DNA of 64,000 nucleotides from Octopus sinensis (Eukaryota), in contig NC_043007.1 of the NCBI RefSeq assembly GCF_006345805.1, forward strand, positions 61,938,001 through 62,002,000, written 5' to 3'. Below the pieces are notes generated by a model. The model searched no databases and had not been told where the DNA came from. It saw only the letters and a program-made list of their open reading frames with translations. Positions 37,521 to 63,182 of the stretch are shown piece after piece. Position 1 is the first letter of the stretch, and the number at the start of each line of letters is the position of its first letter. Position numbers and translations under genes: made by a program.

Positions 37521-37545
37521 CTTACGTACATATATACACATGTAC

Positions 37546-37576
<31 letters not shown>

Positions 37577-37944
37577 TGTATGTATGTATGCATCTCAAAA
37601 GTAGACACCAGTCGTTCTAGTGATATTTTTGTACGAATACTATCTGGTGCTTTCTTCGAATTTGTTAATCCATTAGTATTTTCATTCCAGCATCGACGTT
37701 GATGGAGACGCCTCGCAGAAATACTCCGACTCATTTGGAATTGTCTTGCAATATCAGCTGCCTTACAACGGGGATTATTTTCAACAACAGGTGTAGGCGT
37801 GGTAAGAAGCTTGCTTCTCAACCACATGGTTCCGGGTTCAATCCCACTGTGTGGCACATTGGGCAAGTGTCTTCTACAATAGCCTCGGGCTGACCAAAGC
37901 ATTATGAGTGGATTTGGTAGACAGAAACTGAAAGAAGCCCGCCC

Positions 37945-38001
<57 letters not shown>

Positions 38002-38064
38002 TATTATATATATATATATAATATATATATACATATATATACATATATACATACATATATACAT

Positions 38065-38097
<33 letters not shown>

Positions 38098-39510: not shown

Positions 39511-39542
<32 letters not shown>

Positions 39543-42454: not shown

Positions 42455-42495
<41 letters not shown>

Positions 42496-42497
42496 TA

Positions 42498-42783
42498 TAT
42501 ATAAATTAGAGAAAAACCACTATTATGCAATTCAAACAATGATAGACATGAACCAAATCATAAATAAATATAAAATATATTTTAAAACATATAACTAGAT
42601 CACTAAAAGTACAAAAATGAAAAAACAATTAACGAATACTTATTATATATTGTTTATTCATTTTTTGTACTTTCAGTGATCTAGTTATATGTTTTAAAAT
42701 ATATTTTATTTTTTATTTATGATTTGGTTTATGTTTATCATTGCTTGAATTGCATAATAGTGGTTTTTCTCTAATTTATATAT
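42498..42783. repeat. AT-rich fold-back, ~132-bp arms with ~19-nt loop
   Basis: ataaattagagaaaaaccactattatgcaattc... mirrored by ...gaattgcataatagtggtttttctctaatttat, with roughly 10% mismatches. Confidence 0.88.
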
Positions 42784-42861
42784 TTTATATATTTATATTG
42801 TGAAATTTGATTTAATTCTAAATTGAATTTTTCATTGTAAGTTTGGAGATATACTCCCTAA

Positions 42862-42914
<53 letters not shown>

Positions 42915-42972
42915 TATTATTATTATATAGCAGATGAAAGACAGAAATGGAACATACGAAAATTTATTATTA

Positions 42973-43078
42973 ATCACGACAATTGTTTCGACACATCTAG
43001 CATCGATTTCTCTTGGGTGGAACACTCAACAACTAGATCAGAAGCATCCGGTGGTGCAGATGTATCTCGTCGGGTGAT
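42973..43078 (-). ncRNA. Type I hammerhead ribozyme with long stem II and a U4C core substitution
   Basis: atcac-CCGACGA-gatacatct...agatgtgtc-GAAA-caattg-TC-gtgat; 5-bp stem I and 9-bp basal stem II. Confidence 0.7.
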
Positions 43079-43439
43079 AAATAAATACAACTGTTCCGCA
43101 ATGTAACTTTCCGTTTTGTAGAATAAAATGCAGTCAGACGGAGGAAATATCTTCATTTATATAGAAGATCAAAAATAAAATCACAGATGGCAAAAAGAGA
43201 AACGAATACGCAATCCAGTGAGAAATGTATTAAAAATAACCGTTAAGAGATATGGATGTATAAACGCTCTTGGGCAAGCTGCATTCACAAAAATGTGAGC
43301 ATAAGCACACGTGAGGTTTGGTGCACTCATGATCACCGAGCCAGTGATCATCTTGGTATGTATAAGAATGGAGAGGTTAAAAGCAAACTTAAGTCATCCA
43401 TACCTTAAAGTAAATTAAGTTAAGTTAACGATTACTCAA

Positions 43440-44062
43440 AATTCATTCTCACTGCATTGTGCGAAAGTACATTTATATGCACGTAAGCATCTCGAGAGTC
43501 GTTCAGAAAATTCTATTAATTATCTTCTCGTTAGTCCACAGAATAGACTGGGATTCCTCGGAGCAACATCTCCTGGAAATTATATTCCCCAACATCTCCT
43601 GGAAATTTTATTGTATGGTTTCGCATATGGTTACTATAACGATTCTTAAATGAATCAGCCGTCTGCTCAATGTAAACATAGGGCCCTCCCTTTGTGTACA
43701 CGGTACATTTATATACAAGATTTGTACTCATACAGAGATTAATAAAAGGACATTTTGATTTTTCTCTGCATGAGCATTTATCGTATTTATTTGTATACAA
43801 GGCAGTCCCGACTCCATTTACCGGCGTTGTTACTGTGCTAGCTGTATCGTAAGTATTTCTACTACAACAAATTGGTCGTAGTTGGTGTTTATCAATGCGG
43901 TTTAGATCTCCTTGGTTGGTATTTATATATACATATAAAATTAGATAAGGTCGGTTTAAGGGATTACTCTGGGTTTCACGTCCATAAAGAGTTTAGCTTT
44001 ACGGTGTATCATCAGATCTCAAAACCTGTTGGCTTAGGCCTCTCTAGAATTTTATTACCATA
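43440..44062 (-). mobile_element. Inverted PLE segment: pLTR/HHR followed by a GIY-YIG endonuclease remnant
   Basis: ORF 43531-43800(-): CSCREKSKCPFINLCMSTNLVYKCTV...YVYIEQTADSFKNRYSNH, a PLE-type GIY-YIG motif. Confidence 0.8.
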
Positions 44063-46172
44063 TAAGATCATAAACCGAACTTTGCTTCAAACCCTAAATG
44101 CCGCCTGCTTAATTCGGCCAAATCCGACATCGGTCTAGCTAGCAAGCATATATTGAGAAACATCAATAACGACATAAGGAGAGACGCCAACCTTTCATTA
44201 TGGCGTGGCACAAGTGAGGTGACTGCTTGTTTAATACCAACAAGGGGAGAAGCAGAGTAAGTTTCACCCGTCTATATCAAAAGGATTATTGGTCAAGGCG
44301 CTTTCCTTTGTTAGGGGTTTCACTGACGTTAGCGACAGGGATATAGATGTCATTATGCACGCCAGAAAAACAGTGCTGTTCAATAAAGGTTCGACCTGGG
44401 TAAAGCAATCCAACTCCACGGGTTCCTTTGATGTAGCGATGGGGGCCTACGATAGCGCTGATGTATGTGACCTCATCGGGTTGTGTATCCTTGATACCCT
44501 AAAACAAAAAAATCCATTTTGTCCTCTTTGGTCACTACAGAGATGACGCCCTGGCCATCCCTAGAAGAAAAAACGAGCACACCCTAGACAGGTTTAGAAA
44601 AGATCTAATTAGCACACTTGGCAACATGGGACTGAAATTAACAATCGAGATCAATCTTTCCACCGCGAACTTATTAGATATCACGCTTGACTTGGGTTCC
44701 AGTACATACAGGCCCTACCGCAAGCCAAATGAGAGGCTAACGTACACTAACACAGCCTCCTGTCACCAACCCATCGTGTTCAAAAACCTGGTGAAGGGTG
44801 TCACCAAGAGGATCACGAACTTTTCCTCCATTCAAGAGATTTTTAGTGCAGTAGCCCCCTACTATAACGAAGCTCTAGCTGCTAGCGGATTTAGGGACCA
44901 CATCTCCTACATGTCATGCCCCAATAGGGCCCTCCCTTTGTGTACACGGTACATTTATATACAAGATTTGTACTCATACAGAGATTAATAAAAGGACATT
45001 TTGATTTTTCTCTGCATGAGCATTTATCGTATTTATTTGTATACAAGGCAGTCCCGACTCCATTTACCGGCGTTGTTACTGTGCTAGCTGTATCGTAAGT
45101 ATTTCTACTACAACAAATTGGTCGTAGTTGGTGTTTATCAATGCGGTTTAGATCTCCTTGGTTGGTATTTATATATACATATAAAATTAGATAAGGTCGG
45201 TTTAAGGGATTACTCTGGGTTTCACGTCCATAAAGAGTTTAGCTTTACGGTGTATCATCAGATCTCAAAACCTGTTGGCTTAAGGCCTCTCTAGAATTTT
45301 ATTACCATATAAGATCATAAACCGAACTTTGCTTCAAACCCTAAATGCCGCCTGCTTAATTCGGCCAAATCCGACATCGGTCTAGCTAGCAAGCATATAT
45401 TGAGAAACATCAATAACGACATAAGGAGAGACGCCAACCTTTCATTATGGCGTGGCACAAGTGAGGTGACTGCTTGGTTTAATACCAACAAGGGGAGAAG
45501 CAGAGTAAGTTTCACCCGTCTATATCAAAAGGATTATTGGTCAAGGCGCTTTCCTTTGTTAGGGGTTTCACTGACGTTAGCGACAGGGATATAGATGTCA
45601 TTATGCACGCCAGAAAAACAGTGCTGTTCAATAAAGGTTCGACCTGGGTAAAGCAATCCAACTCCACGGGTTCCTTTGATGTAGCGATGGGGGCCTACGA
45701 TAGCGCTGATGTATGTGACCTCATCGGGTTGTGTATCCTTGATACCCTAAAACAAAAAAATCCATTTTGTCCTCTTTGGTCACTACAGAGATGACGCCCT
45801 GGCCATCCCTAGAAGAAAAAACGAGCACACCCTAGACAGGTTTAGAAAAGATCTAATTAGCACACTTGGCAACATGGGACTGAAATTAACAATCGAGATC
45901 AATCTTTCCACCGCGAACTTATTAGATATCACGCTTGACTTGGGTCCAGTACATACAGCCCTACCGCAAGCCAAATGAGAGGCTAACGTACACTAACACA
46001 GCCTCCTGTCACCAACCCATCGTGTTCAAAAACCTGGTGAAGGGTGTCACCAAGAGGATCACGAACTTTTCCTCCATTCAAGAGATTTTTAGTGCAGTAG
46101 CCCCCTACTATAACGAAGCTCTAGCTGCTAGCGGATTTAGGGACCACATCTCCTACATGTCATGCCCCAATA
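43678..46172 (+). repeat. Direct tandem duplication of 1246 bp (43678-44926 / 44924-46172)
   Basis: gggccctccctttg begins at 43681 and 44927; ccccaata ends at 44926 and 46172. The identical 85-aa ORF appears twice (44289, 45537). Confidence 0.93.
43960..44020 (-). ncRNA. Hammerhead ribozyme in an inverted pLTR (duplicate copy at 45206-45266)
   Basis: Minus strand gagat-CTGATGA-tacaccgtaaag-ctaaact-ctttatggacgt-GAAA-cccagaG-TA-atccc; diverged homolog of 47348-47408. Confidence 0.65.
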
Positions 46173-47440
46173 TCCGTAGAAGGAAGCGTCGCAGAAATAT
46201 CATTTGGTTTGAACCACACACATACACACACACACACCTTCTCTCAACGTAAAAACGTTTGTAGGTAGGATATTCCTGAAGTTAATAGATAAACATTTCA
46301 CACGTTCACATAAGTACGGACGCATTTTCAACAAGCACAACCTAAGGATCTCTTTTAGCAGTTCCCCCAATATTGAGAGCATTCTAGTTAGCTCCCCAAG
46401 ACCACAAGTGGAGGCAGGATACTCATACAGAAACCACAACAGAGAGAGGCCACTAAGAAACCAAGGGAGTCGTCTATGTAGCTGAGGTACTGGCTGACCC
46501 TAAAAGCAGCAACGTCAACAGCTCTCCAACGATTACTGCAGTAGTAGGGATGACAGTACCAATAGAAGCAGCAGATACACGAACAGAACCAGCGACAGCA
46601 CCATCACCATCGCCAGCGATACCAACAATAACAGCAACAACAGCAATGGCAGTATCTCTAACGGAAATAGCAGCAGAGCCATCTTCAATGTTATCTATAA
46701 CAGCAGTGACAGCACCTCCATCAATGACAATGGCCATAATAACAACATTAACAACAACAACAACAACAACAGCACCATTACCAACACCGGCAGTGACAGA
46801 ACCAACAGCGCCAGTACCAAAAACATCAGTACCAACAAGAGCGGTAGCAGCAACGCCAACACCAACAGGCACAGCACTGCCAACACCCGACCACAGAGAT
46901 ACATCGGTTGCTCCGGGAACACGTTCAAACAACGACTCTCCGACCACAGATCCTCCTTCAGGATACCGAAAAGGAGATACGTTACGTCATTAGCCAGTCA
47001 TATATGGCGGTTTATAGACGACAGGATTCTATACAGAATATCGTGGAGAATCCTAGGAAATCTAGACCCCTACATAAACGGGACCAAGTGCTGTAAACAA
47101 TGCATAGCGGAACAGGCGAGGAATTTAAAGGACTCTCTCGACCCGGGGAACATCCTTAACTCGAGAACGGAGGTCTTCGGACCGTGCTTACATTTCAGAA
47201 TATTCCTGCACGCCTATTGGAACCCACAGGTTATCAGGGTCACTGGTGATCGATAGCTAAAGAGAGAGACAATCCCTTGTTGTTGACATTGAGTAACGAA
47301 GTCTTTCCTCCTTCATATTCTAGAGCCCTTAATAGCCAACAGGTTTTGGGATCTGATGATACGCCGTAAAACCAAACGCTTTATGGACGTGAAACCCGGG
47401 GTAATCCCATAAACCGGCCTTATCTAACTTCATGTATATC
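44063..47440 (+). mobile_element. Penelope-like retroelement: 5'-truncated and frameshifted, RT partly duplicated, core of the GIY-YIG domain deleted, 3' pLTR with HHR
   Basis: KDHKPNFASNPKCRLLNSAKSDIG...; FDVAMGAYDSADVCDLIG; GHYRDD; LDITLDL...YRPYRKPNERLTY...; RRRNIIWFEP; C-terminal tail RISWRILGNLDPYINGTKCCKQC...LNSRTEVFGPCLH (~47030-47200). Confidence 0.85.
47348..47408 (+). ncRNA. Type I hammerhead ribozyme in the 3' pLTR of a Penelope-like element
   Basis: gggat-CTGATGA-t-acg-ccgtaaa...tttatgg-a-cgt-GAAA-cccgggG-TA-atccc. Perfect 5-bp stem I; GUA triplet at 47401-47403; one extra U after the core. Confidence 0.75.
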
Positions 47441-47641
47441 ATATACTGCTCCATAACTTTTATATATATATATATATATGAACATCTGATGAGATGGACA
47501 AGTCCTACGCCCTGTCATTAAGTGCAAGCAACTCTAACCAAATGTGTTGAGTGCTACGTTTTTCGTTTGTTTAATCACTCGTACACACACAAACACACAA
47601 ATACATGCATATATACATACCTATATATATAATGTGTGTAT

Positions 47642-49196: not shown

Positions 49197-51639
49197 TATG
49201 TATATATATTGCAAATATACTACACATATAATTTTAAAATAAACACCCTGTAGAATGTAGTAGTCAATAAAACAGAAATAAGATCTAAAAATGAATTTTT
49301 TTCTATGTGGCTCGGTACCAAATGATCCACGGTCCAGTTGTTTGGGACCCCTAATCTAGAGGTAAGCAAGAACGTTACCGCGTCTCCATTTTACTTTTCT
49401 TTATGTCAAATTCCACGCCCATGGGAGAAACTATATATCTTTCTAATACTCATTCCCATACCGCTTTATTGCCACCACCACTGCCTCCGCCCCCACCAGG
49501 AAGCCTCTATGTAGTTTATCGAGCGGCTAGGAATAGTTAATAAATTTTGACCCAAATCTACGAGACAGACATCATTTTACAGTTGCCTTACCTGAGATAC
49601 AGGTGTTAATGCTTTCGACCGGCTTACCTTGAAGTAACAGGTATATTACCAACAACAATAAAAATAATCCAGCCAACCACCAGCCATTTCTCAGAGATAC
49701 GCATGAATGGCAAGCAACCCGTATCTGTGTGTCGAATGTATTTTAATTAGATGAATATAATGTACACACGTTTATCAGCTGGCAAGACCTAAGATATATA
49801 AAAAAGAAAACTGATGATGGAGTATTAACTATATACATCCAACATAGCTCATTGCCACTGATGCAAGATGATGCCATGTATATATTGTTTATACAGAAGC
49901 ATGAGATGCTTTTCTTTTGCAGTAATTTTTTTTCTTTTTATCAAGAACACGGGTTATATGCCCAACCATCTAGCCTACACCTTCAAACTCCTCGCAAACA
50001 TAAATACGCACGCGCACGCACTTCACACACAAACACACACCACACATACATACACACACACAAACACACAAACACACATACACACACACACACACACACT
50101 CACACACGCGTCTAACTCTAGCAACCATTCCTAACTAAAGAAACATCGTTGATAAGATTCTATCTGTAAAAAAGGTGACATTAACAAGTAAATTAAGAAT
50201 GAAAAAATTCAGTTATCTCCTTCAACGAGCTACAAAGTGGAAGAACTTAGCACAGCTGAAGTGGTTTGAAAAGAACAGGGAGTAGGTATTGGTGAGGAGG
50301 AAAATAAATGTAATGATGATTTTAGGATAATGAACGAAACAGATGTATATCTTTTAACAGTAATTTCCCCTACACTCTTAAAGCTGGGTGTGTATTTTAT
50401 GCCACTTCACACGTCATCCACCTTGCACATACACACGCAGACTTCATTGTATGCATGTGTACACAAGGTGTCCCATAAAGCAGCATTTAATTGTTTTTAT
50501 CCTTGAAAATCTAAGATGTGTATGGGATATATGGTATGTATATATTTGAAGGTATAAAAAAAAAAAGAAAAAGAGATTGCGCGCGTGTGTGTGTGTGCAT
50601 GCGCGTCGTGTTTGCTCATTACTTGCACGCTCGTATATTTGCCAAGATATGTATATACGTATATTGATATTATAGGAGTATATTCATACACAGTGGCAGA
50701 TGCCAAAATTGAGGAAGCTTCTAACAAAACTGTTTGTGGCATTTAATTTTGTTTCTTTACGTTCAGGGTTCAAATTCGACTTTTTCTTTCATCGTGAACC
50801 TACACTTCTCACCAAATACGTATGACTCGAGTTCAAGCTAAATCATCATCTATACATATGTATATATATCACTACCGCAGTACTTTAACGGAGGACTATG
50901 TAAAGTAGTGGCGATTTTTCAAAATATGCGTCTGTACATGGCGTTTACTCTTTCCATCAACAAAATACTTCTATGAGGTACTGTAGATCAGTTAAATTGA
51001 CTCCTATATAAATGTGAGGCTTTGTGCCAATGTTAAAGATAAGTATTATTTAGATGAATATTAAAAAAAAAACAGTCATTTATTGTGATTTTTGTTATTA
51101 TTGTTGTTTGGTCCCAGGTCAGGTTTGGTCGAGCTGGCCTTTTATAAAAGGCATTCCACTTGTGACGAGTGCTATTTCAGAACTTCGAGTTACAATACAA
51201 AAAATAGGCAGAAACTTACATGTCCGAACCTGAATTCTACAACTTGGGCAATGCCCAATTCGGATAAAGTACCTGTGCCAAAATTATGATGCGCTTCTTC
51301 CATTTAAAGACAGAAGTGGGATTTTTGAACATGATTTTGACATGAATTTTGAAGAACGGCGTTCAACCACGAGATGTCAGTATTTCATCGGAGCGTAAAA
51401 GAAATAGCGTTTATCTGTAACATGTGAAAAAGATCGAACGATATTTTAGAGCTGATATACAATGGGTGTGACTCTATATAGCCCCAAAAAGTGACGATTG
51501 TTTTTAAATAGTTCAAAGTGTGTTACTCCATAATGAAAATTTAAACAGTACAATTTCTATTGGCTACTCAGTACATCTCAAAGAGGTACATCTCATTGAA
51601 TTACTCCAATGTGATGAAACAGAGGTGGATCATTTGAGT

Positions 51640-54600
51640 GGTTCTTAAAATGTTAGCTATTTATTTGGTTAATAACGAGTTTATGTAAAATGTCCATGTT
51701 ACTTGTGAAAGTCAGATATTCATTCGAGCTAAGGAAACGTTTTGTACTCAGAAGAACTGGTCGATGAGAAAAAGTTGGTTGTTGGAGAAAGTAATACCAT
51801 TGTTGTGAAATTGCATAGTCACCAACGTCGTGAGGGTACTTGTCCATCGATGTTGTGGTGGTTGCTTGTTGGTGTGTGTTGTATTTGTTGAAGACCACTG
51901 TCGTGTGATCAAGCTGATTGCGTGTATAATAAATGAAGCAAAACAAAACCTTCTACCTTTTAATATATTTATTACTGGACATGATTTACTATTTACGAAA
52001 GAAAGATGCTGATAATAAAACTGCCGAATGGGAAGAGAGAACCGCACCGTGTCATGTAGAAGGTTAGTTGTGGTACATGTTGTGTGAGTATCCGAAATCG
52101 TTTCTTGCTCGAGCTGGTCTGTCTGAATGTCCAAGATGATCTGGTCTCAGTGATCTGCCTTCTGTGAGTGCCCAGGTGGCCTACGCGAATTCCCGAGGCC
52201 GTCTGCCTTGTTCAGTTGCCCGAAGCCATCTGCCTTGCTCGCTTGCCTGGGGTTGTCTGCTTTGTGACTTAGGCGCCAAACTGTTTTGAAGGGTGAAAAG
52301 GGGGTGAAGTTTAAATCATCCGAGGAGCCATACCGCACACAGCTTAACGCTGATTGGTCAATGTATAGATGAATCACGTGAAACTGTGATGGCTCACTCG
52401 TGATCCCTACCTAGCATCTGTAGTTCGAATACCTACAGGAGTCTTCTTCCAGTGATTTACTGTGTAAACAGAAAGAACGAATCAACTAAATAGCGAAATT
52501 ACATAGAAATACAATATGCCAACACAAGCGAAAAAGAACATGCATTGAATACAGAATAAATGCTGAGATAAAGTTCATTTGACAATGATTAAGCAATAAG
52601 TTTGTAATGTATACAAATAGTATCCTCAGTTTGCAACACATTGATATAAATAAGGGATAGTGCGTCTGCTGCATAATTTTCAGTACCTTTAATATGACGT
52701 ATCTCCAACGTAAACTGTGAAATACAAGGTGTCTAATGTCTCTTGGGGAATATTTAACCGTTTTGGGTTAATGGTTTATAATTAGTACAGATGGTGAAAG
52801 TTCTTCCTTCAAAGAAATAGCAAAAGTGTTTTACTGACAATTAACTTAAGGTCAATAATTTTCGTCCGAAAGTAGAACTTGCCAGTAATTTTGAACAAAC
52901 TGTTGAGTATTCCTCCGATTCCAACGTCAGATGCATTTACCATTAGTGATAGGGGTGCATTTGGTATCGGATGGGCTAGCAATTTAACTCTAGTTCTTTA
53001 ATGTCGTTAAAAAACTGTAATTCTGTCGGAGCTAAATAGTTTCATTTTTCCGTTTACTATTACGTAGTGATTTTGTTAGTCGATATATTGTTTCTGTACA
53101 GTACGTGATAAATCGCCAGTAGAAGTTAATAAGCCCGAGAAACTCTCGTAACTTCCTCAATGATGTAGGAACAGGAATATTTGTAACCGTATCTACTTTT
53201 TCCTTCGACGGCTGGATTCCTTCTATCAATAATATGTCCTAAAAATGAGATTGAAGAAACACCAAAAAGACATTTGCTTAAGTTAATTACGACGCCATAT
53301 GTGATAACCTAGTAAAACGTTGTTTCAAACGCTGTTCTTGCTGATCTTCGGTAGGCTTAGCAATCGACAAGTCAACGATACAGGCGAACACAAAGTCTAA
53401 ACAAAGAGTAACTTCGTCAATAAACCGCTGGAAAGTATTTGCAGCACATCTAAGACCAAAATATAATTTTTAAGAAATTCGGCAAGGCCAAAAGGAAAAG
53501 TTATCGCTGTTTTGAGAACACCAGCAGGTTCTGTGGGAATCTGATTATGAGTGTGTGCTGATTATCGAAAAAACAGTACAAACATTAAAAAAAAGCTGAG
53601 AAATCATGAATATAAGGAACAGATAAAAACATTCAAACGTCTGTTGTCTCCACATGGATGCCTATCTCCCTCAGCTTTCTTCGGAACTATAAACAGCGAA
53701 GACCAATTACTAGGAAGGTCGAATTATTCCGAGGTCCAACAAGTGGTCAAATTCATTCCTTTGCTATTTTTAATTTGGCAGCAGTGACTCGTCTGTTCAC
53801 GATGAAACAAGAGGTCCTTCATTGATATGATGCGTAATTGAGTGTACTGGATTCCTGTTTTAAAAACGGTACGAGTGATGTCTGGAAATGTTTGAAGAAT
53901 CGTGTGATAACGATTAGATGTAGAGGGCACAAAGAAAAGAGAATCAACAGCAGCAGATTTAATGCGCGTACCTTGTTCTGATAAATTCTTTTCAGAGTAT
54001 ATCAGTCTTTTGTGTTTCCAATCTATAAGAAGACCAAAGTCAAATAGGAAATCAGCACGATGATAGAATATGCAAGATCCGATACCAGAAAAATCCACTT
54101 GAATTGACATCACAAATTAAGATTTAAGGTCACAGATTTCTCACTGTAAGTGAGAATAAGAGAATGGTTAACAGCTTGCAAGGTTATTACTGTCGATTTT
54201 CGCGATTCGCTTAAGAAGGTCACTGGCCAAATTCTATAAGCTGCTCCCGTACCTACCAGGAACCGATATTTGGAAATAGTGTCGTACATATAAAAGACGT
54301 GCCTTATTGAAGGTACACCAAGAGATGTAATCACGCTTATTTCCCTAGCGCTGCCGTTTTTCTCGCGGTTGAGTAGCTAATTTCAAAGAACATGGCTAAG
54401 TGCAACTGTGTGCGCTAGCACCAAAACTGTTCTGATACCTTAAAAATGTCGTAGATCTCGCACGGAGACTAAATGAGCAATCTCTTGAAGTCCTCCGGCA
54501 ACGAGAATTCGAGCACGGAGAATATCGAGGTAACTTACAATTTCATGAGCCATTTTAACGCCTACAAGAGAGCAGAGCTCTACTACTCAGTTGGCTGATT

Positions 54601-54660
54601 TGACATATTATGGATAGACCACCTCAGGCAAACGAACAAGACAGACGGAAAACGATAGAC
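51640..54660 (-). mobile_element. Degraded Ty3/Gypsy LTR retrotransposon internal region
   Basis: Gag WYQNSFGASAHSCT*PC; protease RFLVGTGA; RT TAITFPFG...CAANTFQRFIDEV...FAYIVDLLIA; PSKEKVDTVTNIPVPTSLRKLREFLGLINFYWRFI; RNase H TDASDVGIGG; probable integrase tail CTTTNLLHDTVRFSLP. No LTRs identified. Confidence 0.82.
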
Positions 54661-54882
54661 AACCGAGAGTTACGTCAAGCTCGTGTATGCGAGTAGCTAC
54701 ATATATGTGTGTGTGTACATATGTATACACACACGCACACATACATACATACATACATACATACATACATACATACAGATATATACTTTATTAATAAATC
54801 ATAATTCTATCTCCCGTTTTCGAGTACTATTTTTCCACCTTGTTTCACATTTATGCGCTTATTCTGGTATACACACACACAC

Positions 54883-54930
<48 letters not shown>

Positions 54931-55657
54931 GCCTATATATACATATATGTTCACGTTCATATATATACATATATATACATACATATACACACATACATAT
55001 ACAGAAACATACATACACACATATTTGTGTATTAAAAATACATACATACATAGGTGCATACGTACGCACACATACATACATACAGACAGACAGACACACA
55101 TGCACTCACACACACACACACACATACTGACAGATAGACAGACTGATCAGACAGACAGGCAGACCAAACAGACAGATAGACAAACAGATGTATACATACT
55201 AAAAAATAAAACCTGGCGTAGCCATATTTAGCTGAGACTTGAGTACAATTCTTGGAGAATAAGTTTTGAAAAAGTGATGTAGGTAGAGAAATATTTGCTC
55301 CAACAATTTGTTAGGAACGTGAAAATGGTTCGGAATGGCTGACTCATTTCACTCACTGTGAAGTGGTTGTCTACAATGAAGCATATTTCCACTGACTTTG
55401 CTATCATTATTTCTGTTCAACGAAGTAATAATTACCAAGTGCGTACGTGCGTGAGTGCGTGAGTGGGTGCGTGTGTGTTTGAAGCAGCCTACATACGCTC
55501 AGGCGAGAAACTTACAGGTGAGACACACATTCACTAATGTACATACATACCTTATGACTGTGTGGATGCACACACTCACACATACGCACACAGACACATA
55601 CACATTTCTGTGTAGGCGTACGTATGTGTGTCTGTATATATATATATATACATATAA

Positions 55658-55697
<40 letters not shown>

Positions 55698-55839
55698 GGA
55701 GGAAGAAATGCACAAATACATGTACACACATTCATATACGTGCATACATAAATACACATATATACATATATATATATATATTATATATATATATATATAC
55801 ATACACATACGTACACACACATACGTACACACACACACA

Positions 55840-55886
<47 letters not shown>

Positions 55887-56058
55887 TGGGACAATAAAAC
55901 ATCCAGATAGACGATACAAAGAAAACAAGGACGGGTCATTCGAAGTTTTCTTTCCTCAGTCGAGTACCAGATTATATTCCGCAATTTCAGCTGATACATA
56001 CATACATACATACATACATACATACATACATACATACATACATACATACATACATACA

Positions 56059-56089
<31 letters not shown>

Positions 56090-56411
56090 GTATGTATGTA
56101 TGTATGTACATATATATAAATTTAAATAATAACAGTGAAAAATTGAATATTAATTCGATTAATATCAATTTAAAACCAGTGACCTAGCATATTGAAAAAA
56201 TCTGTATCTAAATTTGTATCTTTTCATTTGCCTTGCGCGCTTACGTTCTGGCGTTTGCTGAATTTTCTTGAGAACAATCTTTTCTTAGTGGTCAGACCAT
56301 ATGGGTCTACATCTAGCATATTGGATGTCCACTTAGCGGTCATCCCTCTTATATGTGTATATATATATATATTATATATATATATGTATGTATGTATGTG
56401 TATATATATAT

Positions 56412-56449
<38 letters not shown>

Positions 56450-56467
56450 GATATATATATGTATGTA

Positions 56468-56595
56468 TATAATTAATTAATAAGGGTGAGAGAATTAGAT
56501 ACTAATTTAATAGTATATTTATTCCACACCAAGTGGCCTAGTGCTACGAGAAACCTGGATTATTATAATATTTTATAACATATTATAATATTTTC
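56468..56595 (-). repeat. Inverted partial copy of the array unit at the 5' end of the array
   Basis: tataattaattaataagggtgagag...ccaagtggcctagtgctacgagaaacctggattattataatattttataacatattataatattttc is the reverse complement of the unit segment gaaaatattataat...cccttattaattaattata. Confidence 0.92.
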
Positions 56596-59500
56596 AGCAC
56601 TAGGCCACTTGGTGTGGAATAAATATACTATTAAATTAGTATCTAATTCTCTCACCCTTATTAATTAATTATAATTATGCTGCATTTATTTCTAAATGCT
56701 GTTTTGTTTCCGTGAGAGTTTTGGCGCGCTGTTGGTTGGGGCATTTGAATTATAACGTCGGTTGTAATCAATTGAACCACACGCGTATTTATCGTTATGG
56801 TAAAATCTGGCGTGTGATTGAGTGGATTTCATCCAGATAGTCTTGGCTGACGAGCTACAAATGGATTATTGTAAGTAATATTACATTTAATTCATTAATA
56901 GCGAAACAATTGTCCCAAAATAATCTGTATTTTGTTATTTTTATTTGCCCTGTCCGTGTGAGCTAACAGTCGTACTTGGCTTTCATGGGAAACATGTATT
57001 TTCGTGGTTGAAACCTTTTGGATTAACTGGTGCTAGAGTGATCAATATAGTGACCACTCTCTATATTTATTTTGTGAAAATATTATAATATGTTATAAAA
57101 TATTATAATAATCCAGGTTTCTCGTAGCACTAGGCCACTTGGTGTGGAATAAATATACTATTAAATTAGTATCTAATTCTCTCACCCTTATAATTAATTA
57201 TAATTATGCTGCATTTATTTCTAAATGCTGTATTTGTTTCCGTGAGAGTTTTGGCGCGCTGTTGGTTGGGGCATTTGAATTATAACGTCGGTTGTAATCA
57301 ATTGAACCACACGCGTATTTATCGTTATGGTAAAATCTGGCGTGTGATTGAGTGGATTTCATCCAGATAGTCTTGGCTGACGAGCTACAAATGGATTATT
57401 GTAAGTAATATTACATTTAATTCATTAATAGCGAAACAATTGTCCCAAAATAATCGTATTTTGTTATTTTTATTTGCCCTGTCGTGTGAGCTAACAGTCG
57501 TACTTGGCTTTCATGGGAAACATGTATTTTCGTGGTTGAAACCTTTTGGATTAACTGGTGCTAGAGTGATCAATATAGTGACCACTCTCTTATATTTATT
57601 TTGTGAAAATATTATAATATGTTATAAAATATTATAATAATCCAGGTTTCTCGTAGCACTAGGCCACTTGGTGTGGAATAAATATACTATTAAATTAGTA
57701 TCTAATTCTCTCACCCTTATTAATAATTATAATTATGCTGCATTTATTTCTAAATGCTGTATTGTTTCCGTGAGAGTTTTGGCGCGCTGTTGGTTGGGGC
57801 ATTTGAATTATAACGTCGGTTGTAATCAATTGAACCACACGCGTATTTATCGTTATGGTAAAATCTGGCGTGTGATGAGTGGATTTCATCCAGATAGTCT
57901 GGCTGACGAGCTACAAATGGATTATTGTAAGTAATATTACATTAATTCATTAATAGCGAAACAATTGTCCCAAAATAATCTGTATTTTGTTATTTTTATT
58001 TGCCCTGTCCGTGTGAGCTAACAGTCGTACTTGGCTTCATGGGAAACATGTATTTTCGTGGTTGAAACCTTTTGGATTAACTGGTGCTAGAGTGATCATA
58101 TAGTGACCACTCTCTTATATTTATTTTGTGAAAATATTATATATGTTATAAAATATTATAATAATCCAGGTTTCTCGTAGCACTAGGCCACTTGGTGTGG
58201 AATAAATATACTATTAAATTAGTATCTAATTCTCTCACCCTTATAATTAATTATAATTATGCTGCATTTATTTCTAAATGCTGTATTGTTTCCGTGAGAG
58301 TTTTGCGCGCTGTTGGTTGGGGCATTTGAATTATAACGTCGGTTGTAATCAATTGAACCACACGCGTATTTATCGTTATGGTAAAATCTGGCGTGTGATT
58401 GAGTGGATTTCATCCAGATAGTCTTGGCTGACGAGCTACAAATGGATTATTGTAAGTAATATTACATTTAATTCATTAATAGCGAAACAATTGTCCCAAA
58501 ATAATCTGTATTTTGTTATTTTTATTTGCCCTGTCGTGTGAGCTAACAGTCGTACTTGGCTTTCATGGGAAACATGTATTTTCGTGGTTGAAACCTTTTG
58601 GATTAACTGGTGCTAGAGTGATCAATATAGTGACCACTCTCTTATATTTATTTTGTGAAAATATTATAATATGTTATAAAATATTATAATAATCCAGGTT
58701 TCTCGTAGCACTAGGCCACTTGGTGTGGAATAAATATACTATTAATTAGTATCTAATCTCTCACCCTTATTAATTAATTATAATTATGCTGCATTTATTT
58801 CTAAATGCTGTATTTGTTTCCGTGAGAGTTTTGGCGCGCTGTTGGTTGGGGCATTTGAATTATAACGTCGGTTGTAATCAATTGAACCACACGCGTATTT
58901 ATCGTTATGGTAAAATCTGGCGTGTGATTGAGTGGATTTCATCCAGATAGTCTTGGCTGACGAGCTACAAATGGATTATTGTAAGTAATATTACATTTAA
59001 TTCATTAATAGCGAAACAATTGTCCCAAAATAATCTGTATTTTGTTATTTTTATTTGCCTGTCCGTGTGAGCTAACAGTCGTACTTGGCTTTCATGGGAA
59101 ACATGTATTTTCGTGGTTGAAACCTTTTGGATTAACTGGTGCTAGAGTGATCAATATAGTGACCACTCTCTTATATTTATTTTGTGAAAATATTATATAT
59201 GTTATAAAATATTATAATAATCCAGGTTTCTCGTAGCACTAGGCCACTTGGTGTGGAATAAATATACTATTAAATTAGTATCTAATTCTCTCACCCTTAT
59301 TAATTAATTATAATTATGCTGCATTTATTTCTAAATGCTGTATTTGTTTCCGTGAGAGTTTTGGCGCGCTGTTGGTTGGGGCATTTGAATTATAACGTCG
59401 GTTGTAATCAATTGAACCACACGCGTATTATCGTTATGGTAAAATCTGGCGTGTGATTGAGTGGATTTCATCCAGATAGTCTTGGCTGACGAGCTACAAA

Positions 59501-62359
59501 TGGATTATTGTAAGTAATATTACATTTAATTCATTAATAGCGAAACAATTGTCCAAAATAATCTGTATTTTGTTATTTTTATTTGCCCTGTCCGTGTGAG
59601 CTAACAGTCGTACTTGGCTTTCATGGGAAACATGTATTTTCGTGGTTGAAACCTTTTGGATTAACTGGTGCTAGAGTGATCAATATAGTGACCACTCTCT
59701 TATATTTTGTGAAAATATTATAATATGTTATAAAATATTATAATAATCCAGGTTTCTCGTAGCACTAGGCCACTTGGTGTGGAATAAATATACTATTAAA
59801 TTAGTATCTAATTCTCTCACCCTTATTAATTAATTATAATTATGCTGCATTTATTTCTAAATGCTGTATTTGTTTCCGTGAGAGTTTTGGCGCGCTGTGG
59901 TTGGGGGCATTTGAATTATAACGTCGGTTGTAATCAATTGAACCACACGCGTATTTATCGTTATGGTAAAATCTGGCGTGTGATTGAGTGGATTCATCCA
60001 GATAGTCTTGGCTGACGAGCTACAAATGGATTATTGTAAGTAATATTACATTTAATTCATTAATAGCGAAACAATTGTCCCAAAATAATCTGTATTTTGT
60101 TATTTTTATTTGCCCTGTCCGTGTGAGCTAACAGTCGTACTTGGCTTTCATGGGAAACATGTATTTTCGTGGTTGAAACCTTTTGGATTAACTGGTGCTA
60201 GAGTGATCAATATAGTGACCACTCTCTTATATTTATTTTGTGAAAATATTATAATATGTTATAAAATTATAATAATCCAGGTTTCTCGTAGCACTAGGCC
60301 ACTTGGGTGGAATAAATATACTATTAATTAGTATCTAATTCTCTCACCCACCCTTATTAATTAATTATAATTATGCTGCATTTATTTCTAAATGCTGTAT
60401 TTGTTTCCGTGAGAGTTTTGGCGCGCTGTTGGTTGGGGCATTTGAATTATAACGTCGGTTGTAATCATTGAACCACACGCGTATTTATCGTTATGGTAAA
60501 ATCTGGCGTGTGATTGAGTGGATTTCATCCAGATAGTCTTGGCTGACGAGCTACAAATGGATTATTGTAAGTATATTACATTTAATTCATTAATAGCGAA
60601 ACAATTGTCCCAAAATAATCTGTATTTTGTTATTTTTATTTGCCCTGTCCGTGTGAGCTAACAGTCGTACTTGGCTTTCATGGGAAACATGTATTTTCGT
60701 GGTTGAAACCTTTTGGATTAACTGGTGCTAGAGTGATCAATATAGTGACCACTCTCTTATATTTATTTTGTGAAAATATTATAATATGTTATAAAATATT
60801 ATAATAATCCAGGTTTCTCGTAGCACTAGGCCACTTGGTGTGGAATAAATATACTATTAATTAGTATCTAATTCTCTCACCCTTATTAATTAATTATAAT
60901 TATGCTGCATTTATTTCTAAATGCTGTATTTGTTTCCGTGAGAGTTTTGGCGCGCTGTTGGTTGGGGCATTTGAATTATAACGTCGGTTGTAATCAATTG
61001 AACCACACGCGTATTATCGTTATGGTAAAATCTGGCGTGTGATTGAGTGGATTTCATCCAGATAGTCTTGGCTGACGAGCTACAAATGGATTATTGTAAG
61101 TAATATTACATTTAATTCATTAATAGCGAAACAATTGTCCCAAAATAATCTGTATTTTGTTATTTTTATTTGCCCTGTCCGTGTGAGCTAACAGTCGTAC
61201 TTGGCTTTCATGGGAACATGTATTTTCGTGGTTGAAACCTTTTGGATTACTGGTGCTAGAGTGATCAATATAGTGACCACTCTCTTATATTTATTTTGTG
61301 AAAATATTATAATATGTTATAAAATATTATAATAATCCAGGTTTCTCGTAGCACTAGCCACTTGGTGTGGAATAAATATACTATTAAATTAGTATCTAAT
61401 TCTCTCACCCTTATTAATTAATTATAATTATGCTGCATTTATTTCTAAATGCTGTATTTGTTTCCGTGAGAGTTTTGGCGCGCTGTTGGTTGGGGCATTT
61501 GAATTATAACGTCGGTTGTAATCAATTGAACCACACGCGTATTTATCGTTATGGTAAAATCTGGCGTGTGATTGAGTGGATTTCATCCAGATAGTCTTGG
61601 CTGACGAGCTACAAATGGATTATTGTAAGTAATATTACATTTAATTCATTAATAGCGAAACAATTGTCCCAAAATAATCTGTATTTTGTTATTTTTATTT
61701 GCCCTGTCCGTGTGAGCTAACAGTCGTACTTGGCTTTCATGGGAAACATGTATTTTCGTGGTTGAAACCTTTTGGATTAACTGGTGCTAGAGTGATCAAT
61801 ATAGTGACCACTCTCTTATATTTATTTTGTGAAAATATTATAATATGTTATAAAATATTATAATAATCCAGGTTTCTCGTAGCACTAGGCCACTTGGTGT
61901 GGAATAATATACTATTAAATTAGTATCTAATTCTCTCACCCTTATTAATTAATTATAATTATGCTGCATTTATTTCTAAATGCTGTATTTGTTTCCGTGA
62001 GAGTTTTGGCGCGCTGTTGGTTGGGGCATTTGAATTATAACGTCGGTTGTAATCAATTGAACCACACGCGTATTTATCGTTATGGTAAAATCTGGCGTGT
62101 GATTGAGTGGATTTCATCCAGATAGTCTTGGCTGACGAGCTACAAATGGATTATTGTAAGTAATATTACATTTAATTCATTAATAGCGAAACAATTGTCC
62201 CAAAATAATCTGTATTTTGTTATTTTTATTTGCCCTGTCCGTGTGAGCTAACAGTCGTACTTGGCTTTCATGGGAAACATGTATTTTCGTGGTTGAAACC
62301 TTTTGGATTAACTGGTGCTAGAGTGATCAATATAGTGACCACTCTCTTATATTTATTTT
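56596..62359 (+). repeat. Tandem array of ~10.9 units of ~531 bp, each with a hammerhead ribozyme (retrozyme-like)
   Basis: Marker CTGACGAGCTAC starts at 56847, 57377, 57903, 58428, 58957, 59486, 60012, 60543, 61072, 61601 and 62132 (spacing 525-531). Units differ mostly by 1-nt indels. Confidence 0.95.
56843..56918 (+). ncRNA. Type I hammerhead ribozyme, first of 11 array copies
   Basis: Stem I ttgg/ccaa (extended by cagat/atctg); core CUGACGA 56847-56853; stem II gcta...tagc enclosing a 49-nt hairpinned insert; GAAA 56903-56906; palindromic stem III CAAUUG; cleavage triplet GUC 56912-56914. Confidence 0.9.
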
Positions 62360-62417
62360 ATGTATGTATAATATATATATATATATAATATATATATATA
62401 TATATACATATATATAC

Positions 62418-62450
<33 letters not shown>

Positions 62451-62463
62451 CATATATATATAC

Positions 62464-62496
<33 letters not shown>

Positions 62497-63182
62497 ACAT
62501 ATATATATATATATATAATATATATATATATATATTATATATATATATTATATATATATAATATAATATATATATGCGCACATATTACTAGAGCGTATAC
62601 AAATCTTTGCATTTATATATATCCATGAAGTAGGGTGGGCTTCTCATGTCCTTGATAAATCTTATATAGGTTTTATCCTTATATTTTATTTATAAATTAA
62701 ACCGGAATATATTCAGTGCTGAATTGTTCCGATTATACACGTGCGGCCGAGATGAACTTGAGATGCCCACCTTTCATTGATATATAAGTGTGAATATTTG
62801 TATATGCTCTGCTGGATGCGTTGTTGTTCGCTTAGTATCCGGAGATGTTTATATTTATATTTTCTGGTTATGTTGTGCCGATGACTGGAGAGCATATTAT
62901 ACCTGCTGACCATGAAATCATTAACGATATACGCCTAAACCTTTTTAAAGGATCTTCTATGTTTATTCCCCCGATTTCGGTGCCTGTGTATATTTATTGA
63001 AGTAGTTTGACTTTAGAGTTCCATTACAGCGTGAGGCGTTAATTATAGTAATAGCCTTTGGTATAATAAAGTTTTGTATACTTAAGGAAAAAAATTATAT
63101 ACTTTGTATTAATTTTTTCCTCAATTGGCTTTCCACGCTGGCTACTTGATAAATCCTTTACAGATTTTATCCTTATATTTCA

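What the first reader, a model, noticed from the sequence alone, without database searches (positions are those of the whole stretch)
56596..62359. Tandem array of 11 hammerhead-ribozyme units (~531 nt): candidate large retrozyme / self-processing circular RNA system
Seen: about 10.9 near-identical head-to-tail units. Each contains ttgg-CUGACGA-gcua[...]uagc-GAAA-CAAUUG-UC-ccaa, a type I hammerhead with every catalytic core position intact, a short palindromic stem III and a GUC cleavage triplet (first at 56912-56914). One copy (57903) lacks a T in stem I, likely a read error. No credible ORF is present. Established: metazoan non-LTR retrozymes are tandem repeats carrying type I HHRs with minimal palindromic stem III that cleave as dimers, give monomeric and circular RNAs, and are thought to be mobilised by Penelope-like elements; described units are usually shorter (a few hundred nt or less). 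Inference: a transcript through the array would be cut every ~531 nt into monomers that could circularise. This would be an unusually large, young, apparently active cephalopod retrozyme.
Basis: partly seen in the sequence, partly recalled or inferred. Interest (0 to 1): 0.95.

Follow-up and report, generated by a model that had tools for sequence, protein, structure and literature searches.

The report
Hammerhead-ribozyme tandem repeat (retrozyme) in octopus
An octopus chromosome segment carries about 11 near-identical 532-base repeats, each with an intact self-cutting hammerhead RNA motif, inserted as one block into a TA microsatellite; it is a very young example, apparently the first noted in a cephalopod, of a known class of mobile element (animal "retrozymes"), not a new kind of system.

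Summary
There are 11 hammerhead (HHR) motifs at a 525-531 nt period in a 10.9-unit direct array (56597-62359, + strand, consensus 532 nt). There are no base substitutions between units, only homopolymer indels that look like long-read errors. All HHR core positions and helices I and II are present. Helix III is 2 bp plus an AAUU loop, inside an 8-nt palindrome that can pair between two copies. No such motif appeared in 150 shuffles of the window, although no Rfam hammerhead model matches it even at E<=10.

New points:
- The host is Octopus.
- The array sits in a (TA)n microsatellite, is flanked by an 11-nt direct repeat (ATGTATGTATA), and is preceded by a 129-nt inverted piece of the unit. AT-rich/microsatellite targets and an inverted 5' copy are published Penelope-like element (PLE) traits; a flanking duplication of more than 4 bp fits published retrozyme insertions.
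- The window also holds two decayed PLEs with their own HHRs. One has the same architecture as the array's HHR but different, compensating helix sequences.
- The monomer RNA is predicted to be unusually self-paired (z = -6.6).

Best reading: a young non-LTR retrozyme. The "unusually large" claim fails, because published units reach 972 bp. Cleavage, circular RNA and current activity are untested.

The parts
56350..56469 (.). Left flank: (TA)n microsatellite. Its last 11 nt (56459-56469, ATGTATGTATA) are the left copy of the putative target-site duplication.
   Evidence: TRF row 56350-56471; sequence; the 11-mer occurs within about 600 nt of the array only at 56459 and 62360.
56466..56596 (-). 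Inverted partial unit: the reverse complement of unit positions ~162-292. With the first direct unit it forms a 78-bp perfect foldback (56468-56545 / 56596-56673). The foldback centre lies within about 5 nt of the centre of the unit's own AT-rich near-palindrome.
   Evidence: Inverted repeats I1 and I10, 100% complementary; blastn q162-290 on the minus strand; sequence. The first 4 nt (TATA) are shared with the flanking duplication, so the boundary is ambiguous by 4 nt.
56597..62359 (+). Direct head-to-tail array of 10.9 units (consensus 532 nt, 33% GC). It starts at unit position ~215 and ends at unit position 160, just 5' of the unit's AT-rich near-palindrome (unit 168-197).
56843..56918 (+). 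HHR copy 1: helix I UUGG/CCAA (extendable to 56836-56925), core CUGACGA, helix II GCUA...UAGC carrying a 42-nt imperfect hairpin, GAAA, helix III C-AAUU-G, cleavage triplet GUC 56912-56914.
   Evidence: Sequence; fold; descriptor hit.
57373..57448 (+). HHR copy 2, intact.
57899..57973 (+). HHR copy 3: 1-nt T deletion in the 5' strand of helix I and 1-nt T deletion in the helix II hairpin. Both are in homopolymers and are probably sequencing errors.
58424..58499 (+). HHR copy 4, intact.
58953..59028 (+). HHR copy 5, intact.
59482..59557 (+). HHR copy 6: lacks one C in the 3' strand of helix I (GUC-CAAAA instead of GUC-CCAAAA), in a homopolymer.
60008..60083 (+). HHR copy 7, intact.
60539..60613 (+). 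HHR copy 8: 1-nt A deletion inside the helix II hairpin; core and helix bases intact.
   Evidence: (D8).
61068..61143 (+). HHR copy 9, intact.
61597..61672 (+). HHR copy 10, intact.
62128..62203 (+). HHR copy 11, intact; followed by the terminal 160-nt partial unit.
62360..62575 (.). Right flank: the right copy of the putative target-site duplication (62360-62370, ATGTATGTATA), then (TA)n microsatellite.
   Evidence: Sequence; TRF row 62348-62575.

Best explanation
This is a non-LTR retrozyme: a non-coding, AT-rich, 532-nt retroelement unit carrying one type I hammerhead ribozyme, present as a 10.9-unit head-to-tail array in an Octopus genome.

Shown by the sequence:
- The array, its intact HHR cores and helices, and the absence of substitutions between units.
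- Insertion into a (TA)n microsatellite.
- An 11-nt direct repeat flanking the whole block.
- A 129-nt inverted piece of the unit at the 5' side.

Inferred mechanism:
1. A transcript running through the array folds one HHR per unit. The monomeric helix III is only 2 bp plus a tetraloop, so two HHRs probably pair through the 8-nt palindrome ACAAUUGU to form a double hammerhead.
2. Each HHR cuts after GUC, releasing 532-nt monomers with 5'-OH and 2',3'-cyclic phosphate ends.
3. In the monomer the two ends are held together by helix I within a highly base-paired fold. A host tRNA ligase of the RtcB type could therefore circularise it, as shown for other animal retrozymes.
4. New genomic copies arise when a Penelope-like element's RT/GIY-YIG endonuclease nicks AT-rich DNA and reverse-transcribes a multimeric or circular (rolling-circle) template. 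This gives a ready-made tandem array of identical units, a flanking duplication and an inverted 5' piece.
5. Both array ends lie at the unit's AU-rich near-palindrome (unit ~160-197), which I take as the likely site of cDNA initiation or strand switching.
For: Array and motif statistics:
- 11 matches against 0.07 expected.
- The descriptor gave 0 hits in 150 shuffles.

HHR anatomy:
- C3-A9 is CUGACGA, with a G10.1-C11.1 pair, G12A13A14, an A15.1-U16.1 pair, and C17.

Independent instance:
- A second HHR of the same architecture lies at 36326-36405 (-): UUUC-CUGAUGA-GAAG...CUUC-GAAA-CAUAUG-UC-GAGA.
- It has compensating changes in 2 helix I pairs and 3 helix II pairs.
- Its helix III is different but still palindromic.
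- It lies in the terminal repeat of a PLE fragment.

Dimer reading:
- The monomeric helix III adds no stability.
- The ACAAUUGU self-duplex is -7.8 kcal/mol.
- The double-HHR fold (-41.2 kcal/mol) equals twice the monomer MFE.

Self-pairing:
- Circular monomer MFE is -145.8 kcal/mol against -108.7 +/- 5.6 for shuffles (z = -6.6), with 68% of bases paired.

Insertion signature:
- The flanking 11-mer occurs only at the two junctions.
- The inverted piece is 100% complementary.
- (TA)n lies on both sides.

Youth:
- 0 substitutions in about 5.3 kb of full units.

Literature:
- Class definition and RtcB circularisation: PMC7229834.
- PLE insertions with an inverted 5'-truncated copy and microsatellite bias: PMC8557442.
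- A PLE enzyme that nicks AT-rich DNA and extends both strands: PMC11167929.
- Retrozymes as non-autonomous PLE derivatives: 10.64898/2026.07.22.740005.
- Young PLE families in O. vulgaris: PMC13282606.
Against: - No Rfam hammerhead model matches, even at E<=10.
- There is no evidence of transcription, cleavage or circles.
- There is only one locus and no relatives. None were found elsewhere in the window, in 5.8 billion proteins via unit ORFs, or in JGI metagenomes. Mobility therefore rests on one insertion signature.
- The units are identical, so there is no covariation or purifying-selection signal within the family.
- Helix II is very long and no loop-loop tertiary contacts are recognisable, which in published PLE-type HHRs goes with weak activity in vitro (PMC4209133).
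- The unit shows no sequence similarity to the 3' regions of the two PLEs in the window, so no autonomous partner is identified.
- The inverted piece starts at unit ~292, not at the same terminal position as the array's 3' end (unit 160). This differs from the PLE fragment at 36.3-37.3 kb, whose two arms end at the same base.
- The flanking repeat lies in low-complexity DNA.
Confidence: 0.72

Rival explanations
1. It is an ordinary satellite or tandem duplication that carries a hammerhead motif as a silent fossil. On this view copy number grew by unequal crossing-over or replication slippage at the DNA level, and no RNA cycle operates today.
For: - No expression data.
- Single locus in the window.
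- HHRs of this minimal, long-helix-II type cleave poorly in vitro (PMC4209133).
- HHR cleavage was dispensable for PLE insertion in vitro (PMC11167929).
- The neighbouring PLE copy HHR2' has already lost C3 and G12, so such motifs decay freely once inserted.
Against: - The whole block is bounded by an 11-nt duplication and begins with an inverted piece. This marks an insertion event rather than in-situ growth from unique DNA.
- All 11 cores are intact.
- The monomer is far more self-paired than chance.
- DNA-level change of copy number after insertion is not excluded and is compatible with the main explanation.
Confidence: 0.17
2. It is partly or wholly an assembly artefact. On this view a long-read assembler misjudged the copy number, or a chimeric foldback read created the inverted piece.
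For: - The units differ only by homopolymer deletions typical of poorly polished nanopore consensus in repeats.
- The O. vulgaris reference is ONT R9.4.1 polished with Hypo (PMC10700109).
- PLE-type tandem/inverted structures are known to trouble assemblies (PMC8557442).
Against: - The foldback is short (129 nt) and abuts a flanking duplication, unlike a read-through palindrome.
- The array is 5.8 kb, well within single nanopore reads.
- A similar inverted-arm structure with 4 real substitutions between its arms exists at 36268-37259, so such structures are genuine in this genome.
- The exact copy number and the single-base indels should still not be trusted.
Confidence: 0.06
3. It is a DNA copy (a rolling-circle reverse-transcription product) of an autonomously replicating viroid-like or satellite-like circular RNA, rather than of a genome-born retroelement.
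For: - A 532-nt, non-coding, highly self-paired unit with a hammerhead resembles viroid-like RNAs.
- Identical multimeric units fit rolling-circle copying.
Against: - A hammerhead is present in one polarity only; there is no motif or Rfam ribozyme hit on the minus strand.
- The helix III/dimer design and the insertion signature match PLE-associated elements of animal genomes.
- No related RNA or DNA was found in any collection searched.
Confidence: 0.03

Closest known systems
Metazoan non-LTR retrozymes (Cervera & de la Pena 2020, PMC7229834; Li, Clavereau & Pollet 2026 preprint, 10.64898/2026.07.22.740005)
   Same: - Head-to-tail repeats of a few hundred bp, each with one type I HHR.
- Low GC (33% here; <45-50% in the class).
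- No ORF, and no LTR-like direct repeats flank the block.
- A flanking duplication longer than 4 bp.
- A strongly self-paired monomer.
- Co-occurrence with PLEs in the same genome.
   Different: - The host group (cephalopod) is not in the papers found.
- The unit (532 nt) is above the 170-400 nt of the 2020 paper but inside the 51-972 bp range of the 2026 survey.
- The HHR has a very long helix II (50 nt between the core halves) and no recognisable loop-loop contacts. It therefore resembles PLE-type and amphibian dimer-dependent HHRs rather than the efficient canonical HHRs of most invertebrate retrozymes.
- Expression and circles are not shown here.
Hammerheads in the pseudo-LTRs of Penelope-like elements (Cervera & de la Pena 2014, PMC4209133; Luense et al. 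2017, recalled from memory)
   Same: - Short helix I, long helix II and a conserved G10.1-C11.1 pair.
- A minimal helix III with a palindromic sequence, implying action as dimers.
- An HHR of identical architecture sits in a PLE terminal repeat 20 kb away in this window (36326-36405).
   Different: - The array has no RT/EN ORF. No PLE coding sequence lies between 47.3 kb (about 9 kb from the array) and the window end.
- The unit has no sequence similarity to the two PLE 3' regions in the window.
- It lacks the unpaired nucleotide between A9 and G10.1 that is typical of PLE min-HHRs.
Classical HHR satellites: newt satellite 2 (~330 bp), Schistosoma Sm-alpha, Dolichopoda pDo500 (~500 bp). Recalled from memory; now grouped with retrozymes.
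   Same: Tandem genomic repeats transcribed into self-cleaving multimers; the newt HHR needs a double-hammerhead; pDo500 has a similar unit length.
   Different: Those are high-copy, diverged satellite families. Here there is one short array with no substitutions and clear insertion boundaries.
Plant LTR retrozymes (Cervera et al. 2016, PMC4918200)
   Same: Non-autonomous retroelements that use HHRs to make circular RNA intermediates of 600-1000 nt.
   Different: The plant elements have type III HHRs inside LTRs, PBS/PPT motifs, 4-bp duplications, >55% GC and Ty3-type mobilisation. No LTR-like repeats are present here; PBS/PPT motifs were not searched for.

Membership tests
Hammerhead ribozyme (type I) | Conserved core: C3 U4 G5 A6 N7 G8 A9, G12 A13 A14, A15.1-U16.1 pair, H17 (not G) at the cleavage site | tested here: met
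   CUGACGA ... GAAA ... GUC is present in all 11 copies.
Hammerhead ribozyme (type I) | Three helices around the core, with helix I open (5'/3' ends) and G10.1-C11.1 at the base of helix II | tested here: met
   - Helix I is UUGG/CCAA plus an extension.
- Helix II is GCUA/UAGC plus 9+5 further bp.
- Helix III is A-U and C-G plus an AAUU loop.
- Helix III is not stable as a monomer but forms an 8-bp palindrome in a dimer.
- Compensating pairs are seen against HHR2 at 36326-36405.
Hammerhead ribozyme (type I) | Match to a curated covariance model (Rfam Hammerhead_1, HH9, HH10, Hammerhead_II, Hammerhead_3) | tested here: not met
   There is no hammerhead hit at gathering score or at E<=10. The PLE-borne HHR2 and HHR3 are missed too, so the models do not cover this variant class.
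Hammerhead ribozyme (type I) | Site-specific self-cleavage giving 2',3'-cyclic phosphate and 5'-OH ends | not testable with these tools
   Needs in vitro transcription or RNA end mapping.
Hammerhead ribozyme (type I) | Loop 1 / loop 2 tertiary contacts of canonical metazoan type I HHRs (6-bp helix I, 4-bp helix II) | tested here: not met
   Helix II continues into a long hairpin with no capping loop at 4 bp. Helix I has only 1x1 mismatches. The published canonical architecture is described in PMC4209133.
Metazoan non-LTR retrozyme | [quoted passage not shown] | tested here: met
   10.9 units of 532 nt. The published range is 51-972 bp.
Metazoan non-LTR retrozyme | Low GC, non-coding, no LTR/PBS/PPT | tested here: met
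   - GC is 33%.
- The longest open stretch is 63 codons, with no homologue.
- No LTR-like direct repeats flank the block.
- PBS/PPT motifs were not searched for specifically.
Metazoan non-LTR retrozyme | Target-site duplication longer than 4 bp, when present | tested here: met
   ATGTATGTATA lies at 56459-56469 and 62360-62370. It is 7-12 nt depending on how the TATA/T overlap is assigned. Caveat: the context is low-complexity.
Metazoan non-LTR retrozyme | Highly self-paired monomer RNA | tested here: met
   Circular MFE z = -6.6, with 68% of bases paired.
Metazoan non-LTR retrozyme | Expressed as linear and circular unit-length RNA | not testable with these tools
   No RNA data are reachable. 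The unit-ORF search of assemblies, including transcriptomes, gave nothing, but such short ORFs are unlikely to be called as genes.
Metazoan non-LTR retrozyme | Dispersed at several genomic loci (evidence of mobility) | not testable with these tools
   Only this window is available. There is no second locus in it, and no cephalopod genome collection is on hand.
Penelope-like element (autonomous) or its pseudo-LTR | RT plus GIY-YIG endonuclease ORF flanked by the repeat | tested here: not met
   tblastn with PLE-type proteins hits 36391-36867 and 43540-47244 only. Nothing is found in or next to the array.
Penelope-like element (autonomous) or its pseudo-LTR | Sequence relatedness of the unit to a PLE terminal region | tested here: inconclusive
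   There is no similarity to the two PLE 3' regions in the window. The 31 young PLE families of O. vulgaris (PMC13282606) could not be compared.
Penelope-like element (autonomous) or its pseudo-LTR | Insertion signature: AT-rich or microsatellite target, and an inverted 5'-truncated copy at the 5' end | tested here: met
   (TA)n lies on both sides and a 129-nt inverted piece lies at the 5' side, as described in PMC8557442 and PMC11167929. No 30-40 bp 'tail' was identified.

The most novel reading that the evidence does not exclude
This may be a currently active octopus retrozyme caught almost at birth. On this reading a multimeric cDNA, made by rolling-circle reverse transcription of a 532-nt circular RNA, was inserted in one step by a Penelope-like enzyme into a (TA)n site. 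The undecayed junctions (flanking duplication, inverted piece, and both ends at the unit's AU-rich hairpin) would then record where that enzyme starts and switches strands. That would make the locus a natural, directly testable record of how animal retrozymes are mobilised, in a new phylum-level host group.
Probability: 0.3. Interest if true: 0.6.

Novelty: new member of a known kind. Interest (0 to 1): 0.45.

Why it matters
Animal retrozymes are thought to move through circular RNA and to borrow Penelope-like enzymes, but that link rests mostly on co-occurrence and on sequence relatedness in frogs. This locus adds a different kind of evidence: an undecayed insertion whose boundaries carry PLE-type marks, next to PLE remnants whose own hammerheads share the same unusual design.

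It also extends the class to cephalopods. Cephalopod repeat annotations list Penelope-like elements but mention neither ribozymes nor retrozymes.

Practically, the 532-nt unit and its palindromic helix III give a clean construct for testing dimer-dependent cleavage and circularisation. The consensus can be used to annotate similar arrays that Rfam-based pipelines would miss.

Tried and rejected
1. Rfam, whole window at gathering score and 56300-62700 at E<=10: no hammerhead. The only hits are sub-threshold miRNA-like matches to the foldback and the TA repeats, which I regard as chance hairpin matches. The same holds for 36000-47600.
2. TRF cannot see the array because its longest period is 500.
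3. Relatives via proteins: a chimera of all six-frame open stretches of the unit against 5.8 billion proteins gave no hit.
4. Relatives via DNA: two metagenome scans, one with the exact HHR and one with a degenerate HHR pattern, gave 0 hits. No cephalopod genome collection is available, so copy number, other loci and empty sites could not be examined. The nearest annotated gene (HSP20, 22 kb away) is too far for the 10-kb flank of the look-up of encoding contigs.
5. Pfam on window ORFs, including pseudo-proteins of concatenated open stretches: only HSP20 and a weak zinc finger. PLE RT/EN pieces are invisible to Pfam here and have no PDB sequence relative. They were recognised instead through homologues with an RT-CxxC-GIY-YIG layout.
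6. Similarity between the unit and the PLE 3' regions in the window: none above shuffles.
7. Chance motif: rejected.
8. Ribozyme on the minus strand of the array: none.
9. Twin-priming geometry: the inverted piece (unit 292 to 162) overlaps the start of the direct array (unit 215) by about 76 nt. It also does not start at the array's 3'-terminal position, so a simple 'both strands primed at the same RNA site' model does not fit. This is left unexplained.

Full report
**1. What is there**

- The + strand of 56597-62359 is a head-to-tail array of a 532-nt unit.
- The hammerhead 5' half (TTGGCTGACGAGCTA) occurs 11 times against 0.07 expected. The 3' half (GAAACAATTGTC) occurs 11 times with spacings of 525-531 nt.
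- blastn of the consensus shows 10 full units, a 318-nt leading partial and a 160-nt trailing partial. There is no other copy in the 64-kb window.
- Tandem Repeats Finder does not list the array because its longest period is 500.
- The units carry no genuine substitutions. The three apparent substitutions in unit 6 are a T deletion plus a G insertion in homopolymers.
- 31 of 33 single-base deletions lie in homopolymer runs, where about half would be expected.
- If the window comes from the O. vulgaris reference, that assembly is nanopore R9.4.1 polished with Hypo (PMC10700109). This indel pattern is what poorly polished repeats look like in such an assembly (inference).
- Three multi-base indels may be real: unit 6 lacks TATT, and unit 7 has +CACC and lacks AT.
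- The unit is 33% GC. Its longest open stretch in any frame is 63 codons, and a chimera of all open stretches has no relative among 5.8 billion proteins.

**2. The hammerhead**

Each unit reads UUGG-CUGACGA-GCUA[42 nt]UAGC-GAAA-C-AAUU-G-UC|CCAA.
- All core positions are present: C3-A9, G12-A14, A15.1-U16.1 and C17. The G10.1-C11.1 pair is present too.
- Helix I is 4 bp. It can extend to about 9 bp with two 1x1 mismatches.
- Helix II is 4 bp followed by a 9+5-bp imperfect hairpin (the fold's z-score is -3.7).
- Helix III is only A-U and C-G closed by AAUU, and constrained folding shows it adds no stability.
- ACAAUUGU is an 8-nt palindrome with a self-duplex energy of -7.8 kcal/mol. A double hammerhead built on it has the same predicted energy (-41.2 kcal/mol) as two separately folded monomers.
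- A short palindromic helix III that forces two copies to cooperate is what the literature describes for most metazoan type I HHRs. The long helix II and short helix I are traits of PLE-borne HHRs in particular (PMC4209133).
- The motif is open at helix I, so it is type I.
Both are in homopolymers.

**3. Is it more than chance?**

- A full descriptor found nothing in 150 dinucleotide shuffles of the window, both strands.
- In the real window it found 9 array copies and one more site, 36326-36405 on the minus strand (HHR2): UUUC-CUGAUGA-GAAG[45 nt]CUUC-GAAA-C-AUAU-G-UC|GAGA.
- HHR2 has the same layout as the array's HHR: a 4-bp helix II base carrying a long hairpin (53 against 50 nt between the core halves) and a 6-nt palindromic helix III.
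- Its helix sequences differ and compensate. In helix I, G-C becomes C-G and G-C becomes U-A. In helix II, C-G becomes A-U, U-A becomes A-U and A-U becomes G-C. G10.1-C11.1 is kept. AAUU becomes AUAU, which is still self-complementary.
- This is the only comparative support I could obtain, and it favours a real structural class.
- Against this, no Rfam hammerhead model matches the array even at E<=10. The same models also miss HHR2 and a third, compact PLE-type hammerhead in the window. The negative therefore reflects model coverage.

**4. Boundaries**

- The block sits inside a (TA)n microsatellite (56350-56471 and 62348-62575).
- Immediately left of the block and immediately right of it lies the same 11-mer, ATGTATGTATA (56459-56469 and 62360-62370). 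Within about 600 nt it occurs nowhere else. I read it as a target-site duplication of 7-12 nt; the range reflects a TATA/T overlap with the element ends. The caveat is the low-complexity context.
- At the left end, before the direct array, lies a 129-131-nt piece that is the exact reverse complement of unit positions ~162-292 (I1).
- With the first direct unit, which starts at unit ~215, this piece forms a 78-bp perfect foldback. The foldback centre lies within about 5 nt of the centre of the unit's own AT-rich near-palindrome (unit 168-197).
- The right end of the array is at unit 160, just 5' of that same segment.
- So both ends and the inversion point cluster at one AU-rich hairpin of the unit.

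**5. Context**

- The host is Octopus. The intronless HSP20-family ORF at 33170-34201 is 99% identical to an O. vulgaris protein.
- The window also holds Penelope-like element remnants. Pfam does not recognise them, but their homologues have the RT - CxxC linker - C-terminal GIY-YIG layout.
- First remnant: a GIY-YIG ORF at 36481-36867 (+), bracketed by 182-nt inverted arms (36268-36449 and 37078-37259, 98% identical).
  - Each arm carries HHR2 about 60 nt from its outer end.
  - The right-arm copy has lost C3 (to U) and G12 (to A).
  - This is the published PLE picture of a 5'-truncated copy with an inverted terminal copy (PMC8557442).
- Second remnant: frameshifted RT pieces inside a 1246-bp tandem duplication, plus EN pieces on both strands (43540-47244).
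  - Its hammerhead lies just 3' of the EN domain (47348-47408 +): GGGAU-CUGAUGA-U-ACGCCGUAAA...UUUAUGGaCGU-GAAA-CCCGGGG-UA|AUCCC.
  - It has the extra nucleotide after A9 and the bulged long helix II that define PLE min-HHRs (PMC4209133).
- The array unit shows no sequence similarity to either PLE 3' region, so neither is its parent.
- O. vulgaris is reported to have 31 young PLE families with 336 insertions (PMC13282606).

**6. Most likely mechanism**

The sequence shows an insertion of a non-coding, HHR-bearing multimer into AT-rich microsatellite DNA, with a flanking duplication and an inverted 5' piece. The following steps are inferred.
- Read-through transcription gives a multimer.
- HHRs of neighbouring units pair through the helix III palindrome and cut after each GUC.
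- The 532-nt monomer folds into a strongly paired structure. Its circular MFE is -145.8 kcal/mol against -108.7 +/- 5.6 for shuffles (z = -6.6, 68% paired).
- Helix I holds the two ends of the monomer together, so a host RtcB-type ligase could circularise it, as shown for coral, mussel and axolotl retrozymes (PMC7229834).
- A PLE enzyme nicks AT-rich DNA and extends both strands (PMC11167929). It would copy a multimeric or circular template, giving a tandem array whose units are identical at birth.
- Later DNA-level changes of copy number cannot be excluded.
- Assume the rate implied by the O. vulgaris repeat paper (a JC distance of 0.09 corresponds to about 25 My). Zero substitutions in about 5.8 kb then puts the insertion at roughly 0.15 My or less. 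This is my inference; homogenisation or consensus collapse would weaken it.

**7. Comparison with what is known**

- The element meets every testable criterion of the metazoan non-LTR retrozyme class: tandem type I HHR units, low GC, no ORF and no LTR-like flanking repeats, a duplication longer than 4 bp, and a self-paired monomer.
- Its HHR is of the PLE/dimer-dependent kind rather than the efficient canonical kind reported for most invertebrate retrozymes.
- The size claim does not hold. The 2020 paper gives 170-400 nt, but the 2026 survey gives 51-972 bp. From memory, the cricket pDo500 satellite is also about 500 bp.
- The literature searches found no paper linking cephalopods or octopus with retrozymes or genomic hammerheads. 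The O. vulgaris repeat paper mentions neither ribozymes nor retrozymes.

**8. Verdict**

- The added value lies in the undecayed PLE-type insertion signature and in the neighbouring PLE hammerhead of the same design.
- What remains open is everything that needs RNA or other genomes: cleavage, circles, activity, copy number, the empty site and the autonomous partner.

Noticed in passing
window 36268-37259: A 5'-truncated Penelope-like element. A GIY-YIG endonuclease ORF (36481-36867, +) is bracketed by 182-nt inverted arms that are 98% identical, each carrying a hammerhead. The left-arm copy (36326-36405, -) has an intact core. The right-arm copy (37122-37201, +) has C3>U and G12>A. Both arms end at the same base next to microsatellite-like DNA.
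   Followed up: yes
window 43534-47440: A second, decayed Penelope-like element. RT pieces with a YRDD motif lie on the + strand (44048-46464) inside a 1246-bp tandem duplication (43678-46172). EN pieces lie on both strands (43540-43866 -, 46834-47244 +). A compact PLE-type hammerhead sits at 47348-47408 (+), with weaker variants at 43962-44015 and 45208-45261 (-). Pfam and Rfam recognise none of these.
   Followed up: partly
window 2788-2906 (+): A 5S rRNA match at 86.6 bits, well above the gathering score, but with several non-canonical pairs in the closing helix. It could be a 5S gene, a pseudogene or a 5S-derived SINE.
   Followed up: no
window 33170-34201 (+): An intronless 343-aa ORF with two HSP20/alpha-crystallin domains, 99% identical to an Octopus vulgaris protein. 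It is related to the molluscan 'major egg antigen / small heat shock protein p36' family. This ORF identifies the host.
   Followed up: partly
window 56468-56673: The foldback at the array's left end is a 78-bp perfect hairpin. It draws sub-threshold Rfam miRNA-precursor matches (MIR2599 at 54.8 bits against a gathering score of 120; mir-9256). These are generic long-hairpin matches, not evidence of a miRNA gene. If transcribed, such a hairpin could still feed small-RNA pathways.
   Followed up: partly
window 54113-54376 (-): An open stretch containing RFLVGTGAAYRIWP, which resembles the D(T/S)G aspartic-protease motif of LTR retrotransposons. It is probably another transposon remnant.
   Followed up: no
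window 50000-56470 and many other places: Very dense AC/AT/ATAC/ACAG microsatellites, which produce long spurious ORFs rich in His, Thr, Tyr, Ile and Cys. These dominate any six-frame ORF list of this window.
   Followed up: no
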